Assembly (NCBI GenBank): GCA_021613535.1
Contig: CP075497.1
Location: forward strand, 9,486,001 to 9,550,000
Source: Adineta vaga
Lineage: Eukaryota; Animalia; Rotifera
Length of the DNA stretch: 64,000 nt
Direction: 5' to 3'
The notes under the pieces were generated by a model, which ran no database searches, was not told where the DNA came from, and was given only the letters and a program-made list of their open reading frames with translations. This document shows, in pieces, positions 36,781 through 42,063 of this stretch. Position 1 is the stretch's first letter. Each line of letters opens with the position of its first letter. A program made the position numbers and the translations under genes.

Positions 36781-39700
36781 ATGAAGTCAAATTTTGGTTT
36801 AACAGCCTATCAAGCTAAACGGCAAGCTTTAATTAATTTAGCTCTTAAAAGAGAACCAGCTCCTCCACGTTCGAAAACAGTTGTAACCTTTGTCGAAGAT
36901 ATACCAAGTGGAGATGTTAGCATTCAAGAATTACCGTCACCAAGCACACCGGTGTATATAATTGCATCACCTACTAGACAGATTACTATGATAGCACCAA
37001 CACCGACGACCACCAATGAACTTCCCAATACAAGCACGCCTGTGAAAGAGTTAACATTATGTACGAGACATGCTAGTATGATAGCAACACCTATAACATC
37101 TGTCAATGAGTTACCACCAACAAATGCCCAGTCAGCCTACACTGTAACATCAATTTTGTTAGTGCATTGTTCAAAAGTCAATATATGCGGTTACAAATAT
37201 GATTCTATGTTTTAGAAAGAAAACAACTATACAAACACCTACTGTACCATCAACTTTAACAAAAACCGACAAAAGCATTTCACCATTAATTCCTTTGATA
37301 GCTTTAACATTGCTTGTGTTGATACTTGCTGCTGCAGTCATTCTCTTACCACCCATTGCTATATCATTACAAACCCATCGAGGTATAATTTGAGTAGCTT
37401 CAATCGAATATTTCAATTTTATTCTTAATTATAGATATATCTTGTATTCCTGGATGTTGGAACGGTGGTAGTTGTTCTGCCAAAAACGTGTGTACTTGTC
37501 TAACAGGCTACAATGGAGACCGTTGTGAATCACGTAAGATTATTTTAATAAAGAGATCTAATGAAATAATGTCTTACAAATCGACATGATCAGTTTCAAA
37601 TGAATATACACTTCTTCTGAATCCCATACCATTTTGAACATCGGATTTACGGTAATCATTTTTTCTTCTATAGCAATATGCAATCAAACTTGTAACAATG
37701 GATTATGTACGAGTCCCTATCAATGTAAATGTCTAGCTGGTTGGAATGGAACCTATTGTAATCAACGTAAGTCTCCAATTTTGCGCCTGCGATAGATAAC
37801 TATTCATCATTCAAATATTTTAGCTATTTGCACTACTGCATGTGTCAATGGAAATTGTACTTTACCTAATTATTGCAGGTAACTTTTCCAAACTACTTTT
37901 TGTCATATCTCTTTTCTATCTCTAGTTGTTTTGCTGGATATTCGGGTTACTTGTGTCTAACACGTAAATGCCTTTTTTTCTCTCTTCTATATTAATTAGT
38001 AAGTATATCTCGATTTTAGCTGTATGTTCACCATCATGTGTACATGGATTTTGTACTGCACCAAATACTTGCACGTAAGTTATTCTACAAAAAACGATTA
38101 TAGTAAAATGGTTATGAATATGATTGATACAGATGTAATGCTGGCTGGAATGGAACACTCTGTGATGAACGTCAGTGCTTTTTTGCATATTTAATCATAC
38201 ATAATAATTTTGAATACGCCTGTTTTTATAGCGATTTGTTCACCTGCATGTGTGAATGGTAATTGTACACTTCCAAATGTATGCAATTGTAGCACAGGTT
38301 GGCAAGACAATATATGCAGTACTCGTAAGTTTTTTCTTAATAAAATTGAATGTATTCAATAATTACATATGATATCTTTCTCAGCTATTTGTTCGCCTAC
38401 TTGCATGCATAGTTCTAATTGTACTGCTCCAAATACATGTGTTTGTTCAACAGGTTATAATGGTAGCTATTGTCAAGATCGTAAGTTTTTCTTTTAATTG
38501 AAACTTTCCTTTTTAGTTATTCTCTTTTCTTTTTTATTCCGTAGCAATTTGTCCATTAGGGTGTTTACATTCGGGTAACTGTGTAAGTAAACTGATGAAA
38601 TTCATTGTTATCAATTTAATCAGTTCTAAATTAGACTGCACCATCGAATTGCACATGTCCATCAACGTATACCGGTGCAATATGTGAAACTCGTAAGTAA
38701 TTTTCATTACAGATGACACTCATATATTGGAAATATTATTGTTTTTTAGCGGTATGCAAAAGTGCATGCTTGAATAATGGAAATTGTACTGGTAGGATTA
38801 ACTCTGATCAAATCGAATCTATCTTTTGAATACTTTTTATTAATTAAGCACCGGATACATGCACTTGTGCTACAGGATGGACTGGAAGTCTTTGTCAAAC
38901 ACGTAAGGAGTTGATCGAGTGTTGTGTATATAAGTACTGAGAGAGAACAATTTTTTTAAGCTATCTGTTCGCCATCTTGCCGAAATGGGGGTATCTGTGT
39001 AAGTATAGTTTAATAGGAAATTGTGTTTATTCATTCAAATCAATCAATTATCAATTAGGTTGCGCCACAAAATTGTTCTTGTGATACAGCAAATTGGTTT
39101 GGATCTTTATGTGAAACACGTAAGTTGTAGTTTCAATTTCATTTATTACTCTTATTCATTGTCAATGATATGTTTATTTTAGCGGTTTGTGGTAATTGTA
39201 GCAATGGTGGCACATGTGGACTAACTCCTCATACATGGTTCGTAAACGCATACTATTTATTTATCATAGTATCACTGTTTATAATTTAATTAGTAATTGT
39301 ACTGTTCAATGGACAGGTTCTTCGTGTAATACTCGTATGTTGTTGTTTTCAGTCAACATTTAGAAGATTATGATAATGTTTCATTGTTTTCTATTAGCTG
39401 TCTGTTCAATACCATGTCAAAACCAAGGCGTATGCATCGGTATGTATGAATAGTTCAACTACCATCTATTCCACAAAATCAAATAATAATTTATTTTAGC
39501 ACCCGATAATTGTTCTTGTCAAATAGGATATAATGGTAGTGTTTGTCAATATCGTATGTTTACATTAATTGAGAAAAAATATGGATAGAATAGTTTCTTA
39601 TTTTGATAGCTATATGTAATCAACCATGTAACAATGGTGGTATATGTGTTGCACCTGATCAATGTAATTGTACAAATTCATGGTCAGGCTATCTATGTGA

Positions 39701-41256
39701 TATACCAAGATGTACTCCAATTTGTCAAAATGATGGTAAGAATTAGGCAGTTATTAGGGGAAGTTTTCATTTTACTTCCGTATAACATTTTCAGGAATTT
39801 GTGTTGGGCCAAATACATGTCTATGCGATAATTCTACCTGGATTGGATCTTATTGTGAAATACGTAGGTTGATCTTTTACGAAGCAATTTTTTTATTCAG
39901 ACATCTAATATAATCTCTTTCTTTCTCAGCAATCTGTTCTACAACGTGTCAAAATGGTGGTACATGTATAGCACCAAACACCTGTCAATGTAAAATTTCA
40001 GATAGAACTAATTCTAAATTCATTTGTAATATACTTATGTTATTAATTTATAGGTACTACAGGTTACACGGGCGCTACTTGCCAAGATCGTAAGTATTAT
40101 GATAAACTATTTTATTCATATAAATTATCTTTTTTATTATTACTATTGAATAGCTCTTTGTAAACCGTTAAACAGTCACGATTTTCTCGATTATCAAACA
40201 CCAAATGCTACTTGTCAAAACGGGGGAACATGTATATCACCGAATCAATGTGCAGTTAGTAGAGATATTTATTTCAAAACTATTCTATAATTTTGTTCTT
40301 TTCCTCAAGTGTACTTCATCATGGAATGGAACTTATTGCCAACTACCTATATGTACAACACCATGTCTGAATAATGGTAACTGTACTGCTCCAAATACTT
40401 GTACCTGTGAATATACTCTTTGGAATGGAACTCTATGTGAAACACCTATTTGTTCACCAATATGTCAAAATTCGGGTAATTGTACATCTCCTGGTGTATG
40501 TACCTGTGAACGACACAATGGATTGGAAGTCGATGTGAAACACCTGTTTGTACACCAATATGTCAAAATTCGGGTAATTGTACATCTCCTGGTGTATGTA
40601 CCTGTGATACGACACAATGGATTGGAAGTCGATGTGAAACACCTGTTTGTACACCAGTATGTCAAAATTCGGGTAATTGTACATCTCCGGGTGTATGTAC
40701 CTGTGATACGACACAATGGATCGGAAGTCGATGTGAAACACCTGTTTGTACACCAGTATGTCAAAATTCGGGTAATTGTACATCTCCAGGTGTATGTACC
40801 TGTGATATAACACAATGGATTGGTTCTACTTGCCAAACACGTAAGTTTAGATAGATTTTGAATACAGTCGTGGTTCTCAATCTTTTAACTTTCAGCTGTT
40901 TGTTCCTTGCCTTGTCAAAACTCTGGTGTTTGTACAGCTCCAAATACCTGTACATGTCCATCACAATGGACTGGTTCAGATTGTAGCGTTGGTATGTTTC
41001 TTTAATCATGTAGTTAAATAGAAAAAATGATTTGCTTCTTCGTTTACTAGTTAATTGTCATACATGTGCCAGTTCAACTTATAACGCCTCATGCTACAAC
41101 TGTATTGTTTCTATCAATATGTGTACAATAGCATGTGACTGCGAATATAATTCTGCAAATTATACCACATCAGTTCTTTTACAAACAGGTATTAATAATG
41201 GATGTGACTTAACCAATATCAATGGTGTTTTGATCTGTACCGGTACATGTCCATAA
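36781..41256 (+). CDS. Type II membrane protein: P/T-rich N-terminus, TM segment, about 21 EGF-like repeats, C-terminal Cys-rich CVNH-like module; apparent frameshift at about 40509
   Basis: TM segment LIPLIALTLLVLILAAAVILLPPIAI. Many 40-100 nt exons encoding C..C.NGG.C..PN.C.C..GW.G..C units. Final exon 41051-41256. Confidence 0.85.
40436..40830 (+). repeat. Four near-identical 99-bp tandem repeats, one EGF unit each; the first unit is 98 bp
   Basis: Units start at 40436, 40534, 40633 and 40732; consensus CETPVCTPxCQNSGNCTSPGVCTCDTTQWxGSR. Confidence 0.95.
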
Positions 41257-41460: not shown

Positions 41461-42063
41461 TTAAAAACTCTTCTCTTGATCTATTGTATTTAAACGTTTG
41501 AAAAGAAAGTACAAATCAGCAATAGCCACAATAAATGCACAGAATAATCCACATGATATTTGTAAAACAAAATTTTTAATACCAATCGAATATTCCACTA
41601 CTTTGTAACCAAAAACAAAAGCGCCACCAATCGTCAGAAAAACATTTGCAACCGTTATTAATTGTCCTTGAACAGATTTCATATCAGGCATAAATGATTC
41701 TGTTGATACCTTTGTATATAATTGATTACAACTAACATTTTTCGTCATTGCATCATATTCACGATTGGCTTGTTCAGCTTTTAATCTTTCAATACGTGCA
41801 TCTAATTCAGGATTTCTTTCTGGTTCAACATATGTAGGAACAAATAAATCACAATCAGTTAAAATTTCATGAAGATACTTTTCTTTATCAGATAATTTAT
41901 ATGCATCGACAATGATTGATGCTGGAATGTATTTTGTTGTATTTGATTGAAGTATGTTTTCAATTTGTTTATAATCTTGAGAATTTTTATCATCGAATTT
42001 CTTCAATGTATTTTCTAAGAATTGTTCGATTGTAGATGTTCGTTTGATTTGTACTAGATTCAT
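41461..42063 (-). CDS. TMEM199: V-ATPase assembly factor TMEM199/VMA12; intronless
   Basis: YLHEIL..P..ERNPELDARIERLKAEQANREYDAMTKNV, two C-terminal TM segments, ADLYF. Confidence 0.92.
   Translation of the reverse strand: MNLVQIKRTSTIEQFLENTLKKFDDKNSQDYKQIENILQSNTTKYIPASIIVDAYKLSDKEKYLHEILTDCDLFVPTYVEPERNPELDARIERLKAEQANREYDAMTKNVSCNQLYTKVSTESFMPDMKSVQGQLITVANVFLTIGGAFVFGYKVVEYSIGIKNFVLQISCGLFCAFIVAIADLYFLFKRLNTIDQEKSF

What the first reader, a model, noticed from the sequence alone, without database searches (positions are those of the whole stretch)
41051..41256. Cyanovirin-N (CVNH)-like module at the tip of a 21-EGF type II membrane stalk
Seen in sequence: the last exon encodes STYNASCYNCIVSINMCTIACDCEYNSANYTTSVLLQTGINNGCDLTNINGVLIC, which is not an EGF pattern. 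It follows the Y/F-x-x-SC-x-N...C-x-C...TS-x-x-L...N-x-NG-x-L signature of a CVNH half-repeat. Established: CVNH domains are mannose-binding lectins typical of cyanobacteria, filamentous fungi and ferns, not most animals. Inference: a chimeric glycan or pattern-recognition receptor in which a possibly horizontally acquired lectin exon was shuffled onto an animal EGF stalk. Type II topology puts it at the distal extracellular end, and a half-repeat would need to dimerise.
Basis: inference. Interest (0 to 1): 0.8.

Follow-up and report, generated by a model that had tools for sequence, protein, structure and literature searches.

The report
Cyanovirin-like head on rotifer EGF stalk
A bdelloid rotifer membrane protein ends, at its outer tip, in a small cysteine-braced module that is a real but very diverged relative of one half of the cyanovirin (CVNH) sugar-binding domain, a design I found in no paper on animals; in this assembly a one-base frameshift upstream breaks the gene, and I could not check it against reads.

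Summary
Window 41051-41256 (+) is the last exon of a 28-exon gene (36781-41256). It encodes a 67-aa, 10-Cys tail after a cytoplasmic N-terminus, one membrane helix and 21 EGF repeats.

The CVNH reading is supported, but not by Pfam directly: no hit at E<=10. The evidence is indirect and convergent:
- An exhaustive HMMER search links the tail to bacterial proteins (E 4e-7 to 1e-3) that are themselves strong Pfam CVNH members.
- A profile built only from rotifer-type modules finds CVNH chains as its top 13 PDB hits (best E 6e-4).
- hhalign against bacterial CVNH half-repeats gives E 2e-5.
- AlphaFold (pLDDT 94) gives a three-stranded sheet plus hairpin. The seven nearest of 48,161 PDB chains are all CVNH (Z 7.1-4.1, next 3.5), the same list as for a bona fide bacterial half-repeat.

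It is one repeat, not the two-repeat domain, with six extra cysteines. It is modelled as a self-closed lobe, so dimerisation is not required by the model.

Orthologues keep the same phase-1 intron and neighbouring gene.

Caveats: a 1-nt deletion between 40509 and 40510 breaks the frame in this assembly, and reads were unavailable. Lectin function and horizontal origin remain inferences.

The parts
36781..41256 (+). Whole gene, 28 exons curated by hand. Order: cytoplasmic N-terminus, one TM helix, 21 EGF repeats, CVNH-like tail.
   Evidence: Exon table with GT-AG introns of 47-140 nt. Pfam EGF hits on the EGF exons. The spliced product was never joined for any search.
36781..37157 (+). Exon 1: Pro/Thr/Ser-rich N-terminal region of about 125 aa with no signal peptide. 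Inferred to be cytoplasmic.
   Evidence: Maximum Kyte-Doolittle 19-residue window is 0.61. No Pfam hit.
37280..37366 (+). The single hydrophobic transmembrane segment, in exon 2 (37216-37382). Acts as a signal anchor.
   Evidence: Kyte-Doolittle 19-residue window is 3.05. Sequence read.
37435..40991 (+). Array of 21 six-Cys EGF repeats (exons 3-27), most bounded by phase-1 introns.
   Evidence: 126 Cys. Pfam EGF_2, EGF_DL_JAG and EGF_TEN (the last below its cut-off).
40421..40823 (+). Tandem array of four near-identical 99-nt EGF units inside exon 26.
   Evidence: Tandem Repeats Finder: period 99, 4.1 copies, 95% matches.
40505..40512 (+). Frameshift site. One base is missing between 40509 and 40510 compared with the three following units. 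The frame from the ATG then ends at the stop at 40808-40810.
   Evidence: Unit spacing 98, 99, 99 nt and aligned units. ORF frames.
40992..41050 (+). Last intron, 59 nt, phase 1. Same position and phase in orthologous loci L004 and L006.
41051..41256 (+). Last exon. The 67-aa, 10-Cys single-repeat CVNH-like module is at 41053-41253 and the stop at 41254-41256.
   Evidence: Translation; homology; AlphaFold pLDDT 94; CVNH as nearest folds.

Best explanation
The last exon encodes a single-repeat derivative of the cyanovirin-N homology (CVNH) domain, reinforced by extra disulfides.

The module:
- It has one copy of the CVNH unit: a short helical turn, a three-stranded beta-sheet and a beta-hairpin.
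- It keeps Cys at the positions of the canonical intra-repeat CV-N disulfide (C14 and C30).
- It keeps the hairpin-flanking Cys pair found in a bacterial single-repeat CVNH subclass (C51 and C62).
- It has six further Cys that are specific to the rotifer-type family.

Its place in the protein:
- It sits at the C-terminal, extracellular end of a single-pass type II membrane protein.
- The ectodomain of that protein is a stalk of 21 tenascin/teneurin-type EGF repeats.

Inferred mechanism: the EGF rod holds the CVNH-type lobe away from the cell surface, where it binds a ligand. By analogy with CVNH lectins the ligand is most likely a glycan such as mannose-rich chains. The module can fold as a self-contained lobe.

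What is shown: the sequence, the exon structure, homology to CVNH repeats, the predicted fold, and conservation of the module, its intron and its neighbouring gene in related rotifers.

What is inferred: the topology, the ligand, and an ultimately bacterial origin.

In this assembly a 1-nt deletion in EGF 17 breaks the frame. It is either a very recent lesion of this haplotype or an assembly error, because everything downstream is still open and keeps every invariant residue.
For: Sequence homology:
- Exhaustive phmmer over 1.84 billion representatives found 8 rotifer-type modules (E 4e-20 to 2e-4) and four bacterial proteins (E 4.3e-7 to 9.6e-4).
- Those four bacterial proteins score 52-111 bits on Pfam CVNH, whose cut-off is 24.5 bits.
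- A profile of 10 rotifer-type modules, searched against PDB sequences, has CVNH entries as its top 13 hits (best E 6.3e-4). The next, unrelated hits start at E 0.33.
- hhalign of that profile against 17 bacterial half-repeats: E 2e-5, probability 77%, 57 aligned columns.
- The same profile matches every repeat of the bacterial proteins, 37-64 bits in total.

Structure:
- AlphaFold on rotifer-type rows only: pLDDT 94, strands at 14-19, 25-32 and 35-42 plus a hairpin at 50-56 and 59-66.
- The Foldseek top list is nearly all CVNH.
- VIA-align over 48,161 chains: the top 7 are all CVNH, Z 7.1, 6.9, 6.8, 6.7, 4.3, 4.2, 4.1, with 56-60 residues aligned at 1.9-2.8 A for the top four. The next hit is at Z 3.5.
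- A bona fide bacterial half-repeat modelled the same way returns the same seven chains at Z 7.9-4.2.
- The nearest ESM Atlas clusters are CVNH clusters.

Conservation:
- P0008 has lost C51 and C62 together, as expected for a disulfide pair.
- L004 and L006 have the EGF exons in frame, the same phase-1 intron and the tail. L006 and L007 keep the downstream Vma12 gene.

Topology and EGF count.
Against: - Pfam's own CVNH model does not detect the tail at E<=10. It detects 1 of 10 single modules at E 0.085. The best family score is 17.5 bits, for a two-module ORF, below the cut-off.
- One spurious beta-propeller protein sits in the same E-range as three of the four bacterial hits.
- No Foldseek hit reaches E 1e-3, and the tool notes that Z around 7 is common for small sheets.
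- There is one repeat only and six extra Cys, so the binding surface may differ from known CVNH lectins.
- As assembled, the tail is not in frame with the start codon.
- No expression or read evidence could be obtained.
Confidence: 0.7

Rival explanations
1. The tail is a lineage-specific cysteine knot that resembles a CVNH half-repeat only by convergence. The weak sequence matches would then come from composition and shortness.
For: No direct Pfam hit. The pairwise match to CV-N has E 6.6. A spurious repeat protein appears at E 4e-4 in the same search. Z around 7 is not unusual for small beta modules (note).
Against: Four independent routes all point to one family and to no other. These are transitive phmmer plus Pfam, a rotifer-only profile against PDB with 13 of 13 top hits CVNH, hhalign at E 2e-5, and the fold search with a positive control giving the same seven chains. 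The canonical disulfide positions and the N-x-x-G-x-L hairpin motif are invariant.
Confidence: 0.08
2. In this genome the locus is a recently inactivated gene. The 1-nt deletion in EGF 17 is real, the protein ends after about 17 EGFs plus an out-of-frame stretch, and the CVNH-like tail is no longer made from this haplotype.
For: Unit spacing of 98 nt against 99 and 99 nt. The frame from the ATG stops at 40808-40810. No GT-AG path restores the frame. The site is not in a homopolymer run.
Against: About 210 codons downstream stay open across three exons at 30% GC. The tail keeps all 13 invariant and 5 near-invariant family residues. The site lies in a 95%-identical tandem repeat. If G000 is the published six-chromosome haploid Adineta vaga assembly, it was built from nanopore reads and then polished (PMC8494291), and residual indels are plausible in such repeats. 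Orthologues are in frame.
Confidence: 0.4
3. The module is CVNH-derived but no longer a lectin. It would serve as a disulfide-locked cap, or as a protein-protein or dimerisation knob, for EGF or mucin-type stalks.
For: Six family-specific Cys reshape the lobe. The positions that align with CV-N sugar-contact residues vary between family members (alignment; contact residues recalled from memory). The module also ends a Ser/Thr-rich stalk in Adineta steineri and occurs in tandem arrays in L005.
Against: Every characterised CVNH protein known to me is a carbohydrate binder. A distal position on a rigid stalk is typical of binding heads. Neither point is a test.
Confidence: 0.35
4. The module was inherited vertically from an old eukaryotic CVNH gene, or derives from the rotifer's own canonical CVNH genes, rather than from a separate bacterial transfer.
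For: The same genome holds two Pfam-positive CVNH loci on another chromosome. The module has host-like base composition, sits behind a spliceosomal intron and lies on a long stem branch.
Against: The module profile scores the resident CVNH loci at about 5 bits, against 37-64 bits for the bacterial single-repeat proteins. No other animal or eukaryotic relative appeared among 1.84 billion representatives. The 10-Cys class is one clade, apart from the resident CVNH halves.
Confidence: 0.25

Closest known systems
CVNH domain (Pfam PF08881): cyanovirin-N, microvirin, and the fungal and fern CVNHs TbCVNH, CrCVNH, GzCVNH and MoCVNH3
   Same: The repeat-level sequence signature is shared, with Cys at the positions of the canonical intra-repeat disulfide. 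The predicted unit is the same: three-stranded sheet plus hairpin. These are the only structures that match.
   Different: It has one repeat instead of two and 10 Cys instead of 2 per repeat. It falls below Pfam's threshold. It is membrane-anchored on an EGF stalk in an animal, whereas papers describe the family as mainly in bacteria, fungi and ferns (PMC3645700). The one CVNH isolated from an animal, an ascidian, was suggested to be a symbiont product (PMC11952781).
Bacterial proteins with 4-Cys single CVNH repeats, separated by Pro-rich linkers and combined with a beta/gamma-crystallin domain (P0007, P0009, P0010, P0013; relatives in Caulobacterales, Acidobacteriota, Thermodesulfobacteriota and other Pseudomonadota MAGs)
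   Same: These are the nearest non-rotifer sequences. They share the extra Cys pair that flanks the hairpin. A single repeat is modelled as the same closed lobe.
   Different: They are bacterial proteins; three of the four start with a signal-peptide-like N-terminus. They carry several repeats per chain, lack the six additional Cys, and have no EGF or membrane-anchor context.
Teneurins
   Same: The design logic is the same: a type II membrane protein with an EGF stalk of the same subtype and a C-terminal head of bacterial-type ancestry. EGF_TEN is the best Pfam EGF model at 48 bits. The teneurin head's ancestry is from my own knowledge.
   Different: This is not a teneurin. EGF_TEN is below its 65-bit cut-off, there is no YD-shell or toxin-like domain, the protein is far smaller, and the cytoplasmic domain is unrelated.
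The rotifer's own canonical CVNH genes (G000:C3:16057566-16057886 and C3:14893637-14893885)
   Same: Same superfamily and same genome. Pfam CVNH scores are 61 and 38 bits, and the 145-aa ORF of L002 scores 79 bits.
   Different: They are two-repeat proteins; L002 is a single 145-aa ORF. The module profile barely recognises them (about 5 bits), and they fall elsewhere in the tree.

Membership tests
CVNH domain (Pfam PF08881) | Scores above the Pfam gathering threshold (24.5 bits) on the CVNH model | tested here: not met
   The tail gives no hit at E<=10. One of 10 single modules hits at E 0.085. The two-module ORF P0005 scores 17.5 bits at E 0.007.
CVNH domain (Pfam PF08881) | Two tandem sequence repeats of about 50 aa forming a two-lobed pseudo-symmetric domain | tested here: not met
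   There is a single repeat of 67 aa, preceded by EGF 21 and followed by the stop. Matches cover one CV-N repeat at a time.
CVNH domain (Pfam PF08881) | Statistically supported homology of the repeat to known CVNH repeats | tested here: met
   phmmer gives E 4.3e-7 to a protein with Pfam CVNH E 5.7e-32. The rotifer-only profile has 13 of 13 top PDB hits in CVNH, best E 6.3e-4. hhalign gives E 2e-5.
CVNH domain (Pfam PF08881) | Repeat fold: short helical turn, triple-stranded antiparallel sheet and beta-hairpin (fold as described in PMC11952781) | tested here: met
   This is a prediction only. AlphaFold pLDDT is 94 with exactly these elements. The top 7 of 48,161 chains are all CVNH, Z 7.1-4.1, the same list as for the positive control. 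The nearest Atlas clusters are CVNH.
CVNH domain (Pfam PF08881) | Intra-repeat disulfide equivalent to CV-N Cys8-Cys22 and Cys58-Cys73 | tested here: inconclusive
   Invariant C14 and C30 align with these Cys. Model coordinates could not be read, so the pairing itself was not measured.
CVNH domain (Pfam PF08881) | Binding of mannose-rich glycans | not testable with these tools
   Needs recombinant protein and a glycan array or titration.
EGF-like repeat | Six-Cys pattern and a Pfam EGF model above threshold | tested here: met
   EGF_2 scores 39.2 bits (cut-off 22.1) on 40510-40839. EGF_DL_JAG scores 28.1 bits (cut-off 27) on 39612-39734. There are 126 Cys, which is 21 x 6.
Type II (signal-anchor) single-pass membrane protein | No cleavable signal peptide, and one hydrophobic segment with the Cys-rich, glycosylatable part on its C-terminal side | tested here: met
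   From hydropathy only: exon 1 maximum 0.61, exon 2 3.05. All EGFs and 27 sequons lie downstream. No dedicated topology predictor was run and there is no experiment.
Teneurin | Teneurin EGF model above its cut-off, plus the C-terminal YD-shell/toxin-like domain | tested here: not met
   EGF_TEN scores 48.1 bits against a 65-bit cut-off. No other teneurin domain was found.

The most novel reading that the evidence does not exclude
Bdelloid-type rotifers took a bacterial single-repeat CVNH lectin lobe, braced it with three extra disulfides, and spread it by exon shuffling as the distal head of membrane-anchored EGF stalks, of mucin-like stalks and of tandem arrays. The result would be an animal family of surface glycan or pattern-recognition receptors of foreign origin, possibly aimed at mannan-coated fungal parasites. 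This would parallel the teneurins' bacterial-derived head.
Probability: 0.3. Interest if true: 0.78.

Novelty: new variant of a known kind. Interest (0 to 1): 0.6.

Why it matters

This finding would add three things:
- An animal-encoded, membrane-anchored form of the family.
- A form reduced to a single repeat, which is predicted to fold on its own. This bears on how the two-lobed CVNH fold arose from a half-unit.
- A small, disulfide-stabilised scaffold for lectin engineering.

For rotifer biology it offers a testable candidate surface receptor. Bdelloids are reported to deploy horizontally acquired genes against a fungal pathogen (PMC11258130); that paper's main text mentions neither CVNH nor lectins.

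It is also a caution. The Pfam model misses this class entirely, so domain censuses undercount it.

Tried and rejected
- Direct Pfam scan of the tail at E<=10 found nothing.
- Pairwise PDB search gave only CV-N, at a non-significant E of 6.6.
- Automatic minimal-intron and maximal-coding splice walks gave nonsense models. They also showed that no GT-AG path keeps one frame from the ATG to the stop. I curated the exons by hand.
- Paralogues in the same genome: none, by protein or by family profile.
- An exact look-up of the as-assembled 201-aa frameshifted ORF and a word search with it found nothing. The frameshift therefore could not be confirmed or refuted from other assemblies.
- The search for related loci with the half-repeat alignment had no conserved stretch to search with. 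With P0010 alone it found nothing. It worked with the N-terminal alignment A4.
- P0012, a beta-propeller repeat protein at E 4e-4, was rejected as spurious: 0.9 bits with the family profile.
- 'Common animal Cys-rich domain' was rejected: no Pfam, PDB or Atlas match of that kind.
- Teneurin membership was rejected.
- The joined spliced protein was never built for any search or fold. All searches were exon by exon, by reference.
I re-ran it from locus coordinates.

Full report
WHAT IS THERE

The window is AT-rich (about 30% GC) with introns of 47-140 nt, most of them 50-65 nt. It lies at G000:C6:9486001-9550000 of a 100.8-Mb, six-contig assembly. One homologue of the module is an Adineta steineri protein. 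The size and contig number fit the published haploid six-chromosome Adineta vaga assembly (PMC8494291), so the species name is an inference.

On the + strand I curated a 28-exon gene by hand, 36781-41256:
- Exon 1 encodes a Pro/Thr/Ser-rich N-terminus of about 125 aa with no hydrophobic signal.
- Exon 2 holds the only hydrophobic segment (Kyte-Doolittle 3.05).
- Exons 3-27 encode 21 six-Cys EGF repeats: 126 Cys and 27 N-glycosylation sequons, with Pfam EGF hits.
- Exon 28 (41051-41256) follows a 59-nt phase-1 intron.

The layout is inferred from hydropathy and from the position of the disulfide-rich, glycosylatable part.

Exon 26 contains four near-identical 99-nt EGF units. The first unit is 98 nt long: one base is missing between 40509 and 40510 compared with its sister units.
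- As assembled, the frame from the ATG runs into a stop at 40808-40810. The last four and a half EGFs and the tail are open only in the shifted frame.
- No GT-AG intron path restores the frame.
- Downstream, about 210 codons stay open across three exons, and the tail keeps every invariant family residue. Orthologous loci are in frame.
- The lesion is therefore either very recent or an artefact. The published assembly that G000 appears to be was built from nanopore reads and then polished, and the site lies in a tandem repeat.
- I could not decide between these.

IS THE TAIL CVNH?

The direct tests are negative or weak. Pfam gives nothing at E<=10. The only PDB sequence hit is cyanovirin-N, at E 6.6. 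The resemblance seen by eye is at noise level as a pairwise match.

The indirect evidence is consistent and specific.

(1) Exhaustive HMMER search over 1.84 billion representatives. It returned 13 proteins:
- Eight carry the same 10-Cys module.
- Four are bacterial proteins at E 4.3e-7 to 9.6e-4. Each scores 52-111 bits on Pfam CVNH, whose cut-off is 24.5 bits, and each also has a beta/gamma-crystallin domain.
- One is a beta-propeller repeat protein. The family profile scores it at 0.9 bits, so it is spurious.

(2) A profile made only from ten rotifer-type modules (A1), searched against all PDB sequences. Its top 13 hits are cyanovirin-N variants, microvirin and the fungal and fern CVNHs (best E 6.3e-4). 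Unrelated hits start at E 0.33.

(3) hhalign of A1 against 17 bacterial half-repeats (A3): E 2e-5, probability 77%, 57 columns covering the whole repeat.

(4) AlphaFold on 16 rotifer-type rows, with no bacterial rows and no templates. It gives pLDDT 94 and pTM 0.73: a short helical turn, three strands and a hairpin.
- Foldseek's top list is almost entirely CVNH, although no hit reaches E 1e-3.
- VIA-align against 48,161 representative chains puts seven CVNH chains on top: Z 7.1, 6.9, 6.8, 6.7, 4.3, 4.2, 4.1. The top four align 56-60 of 67 residues at 1.9-2.8 A. The next hit is at Z 3.5.
- The tool warns that Z around 7 alone is not decisive. The family-pure top of the list and the gap below it are what count.
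- As a positive control, a Pfam-positive bacterial half-repeat modelled in the same way returns the same seven chains at Z 7.9-4.2.
- The nearest ESM Atlas clusters are bacterial CVNH, crystallin-CVNH and fungal LysM-CVNH.

I put the probability that the module is homologous to a CVNH repeat at about 0.9.

HOW IT DIFFERS FROM CVNH

It is one repeat, not two.

It has 10 Cys:
- C14 and C30 align with the canonical CV-N disulfide.
- C51 and C62 flank the hairpin, as in the bacterial 4-Cys subclass. One family member has lost both together, as expected for a bonded pair.
- C2, C5, C17, C24, C28 and C66 are specific to the rotifer-type family.

The structural alignments pair the model's sheet with the first repeat of CVNH chains and its hairpin with the end of the second repeat (chain ranges). 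This means the model is one CVNH lobe closed in cis. The bacterial half-repeat behaves the same way. A monomer prediction cannot exclude a dimer or a swapped form.

FAMILY, CONTEXT AND ORIGIN

The module is single-copy in this genome.

Related loci from unnamed assemblies:
- L004 has an in-frame EGF exon, the same phase-1 intron and the tail.
- L006 has a much longer in-frame EGF exon (about 17 units by eye), the same intron and the tail.
- L006 and L007 keep the downstream Vma12 gene on the minus strand, as in the window at 41461-42063.
- In L008 the module follows a truncated EGF in the same exon.
- An Adineta steineri protein places it after a Ser/Thr-rich stretch.
- A 51%-GC contig of unknown origin (L005) carries at least ten tandem copies.

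The module therefore behaves as an autonomous, mobile, C-terminal or repeated extracellular unit.

A maximum-likelihood tree of 53 single repeats (60 columns, so weakly resolved) gives the following:
- The 10-Cys class forms one clade (support 98/93) on a long stem, out of a bacterial polytomy.
- That clade is separate from the halves of the rotifer's own two canonical CVNH loci on another chromosome.
- The module profile scores those resident loci at only about 5 bits, against 37-64 bits for the bacterial proteins.

Relatives of the bacterial subclass occur in MAGs of Caulobacterales, Acidobacteriota, Thermodesulfobacteriota and other Pseudomonadota.

This fits a bacterial origin followed by exon shuffling into a phase-1 EGF gene. 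But the tree held no fungal or cyanobacterial rows, so neither donor nor direction is shown.

MECHANISM (INFERENCE)

A rigid EGF rod presents a CVNH-type lobe far from the membrane. By analogy with CVNH lectins the ligand is most likely a glycan. Positions aligned with CV-N sugar contacts vary within the family, and the contact residues are recalled from memory, so I put lectin function at roughly even odds.

LITERATURE

- No paper in the searchable library links CVNH or cyanovirin with rotifers.
- The family is described as mainly in bacteria, fungi and ferns (PMC3645700).
- The ascidian-derived Dm-CVNH was suggested to be a symbiont product (PMC11952781).
- The main text of the bdelloid antifungal HGT paper does not mention CVNH or lectins.
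- A word search of this scan's earlier notes found none that mentions CVNH.

LIMITS

- The spliced protein was never joined for a search or a fold. All work was exon by exon, by reference.
- No reads were available.
- Disulfide pairing was not measured on the model.

VERDICT

This is a real and specific finding: a new, single-lobe, disulfide-braced variant of the CVNH fold on an animal EGF stalk. The gene copy in this assembly is interrupted by an unverified frameshift.

Noticed in passing
G000:C3:16057566-16057886 (L002) and G000:C3:14893637-14893885 (L003): The same genome holds two Pfam-positive two-repeat CVNH loci on another chromosome (61 and 38 bits). L002 is a 145-aa single ORF scoring 79 bits. 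L003 has 4-Cys halves like the bacterial subclass. I found no paper mentioning CVNH in rotifers.
   Followed up: partly
L005:3700-6556 (ENA ERZ26165887, contig of 13.8 kb, GC 51%): At least ten tandem copies of the same 10-Cys module, with a period of about 318 nt, Thr/Pro-rich linkers and frame changes between some units. The organism is unknown and far more GC-rich than the bdelloid loci.
   Followed up: partly
L008:150-416: A variant in which the module follows a truncated EGF directly, in one exon with no intron. It has lost both Cys of the hairpin pair (C51 and C62 equivalents).
   Followed up: partly
window 40310-40840; L004:1392-1829; L006:3122-4918: The last large EGF exon varies greatly in repeat number between orthologues: 5 units here, about 4 in L004 and about 17 in L006 (counted by eye). 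This points to ongoing tandem expansion and contraction of the stalk.
   Followed up: partly
window 41461-42063 (-): The convergent downstream gene is a Vma12-type V-ATPase assembly factor (Pfam 87 bits). Its stop lies about 200 nt from the stop of the EGF gene. The gene pair is conserved in L006 and L007.
   Followed up: yes
window 36781-37157: The cytoplasmic N-terminus contains reiterated short Pro/Thr-rich motifs, with several E-L-P triplets about 25-30 aa apart. There is no Pfam match. These could be docking motifs.
   Followed up: no
window 37158, 39238, 40255: Three introns of this gene use less common GTT donors (two GTTAGT, one GTTCGT). My first splice walk missed them because it allowed only GTA and GTG donors.
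   Followed up: partly
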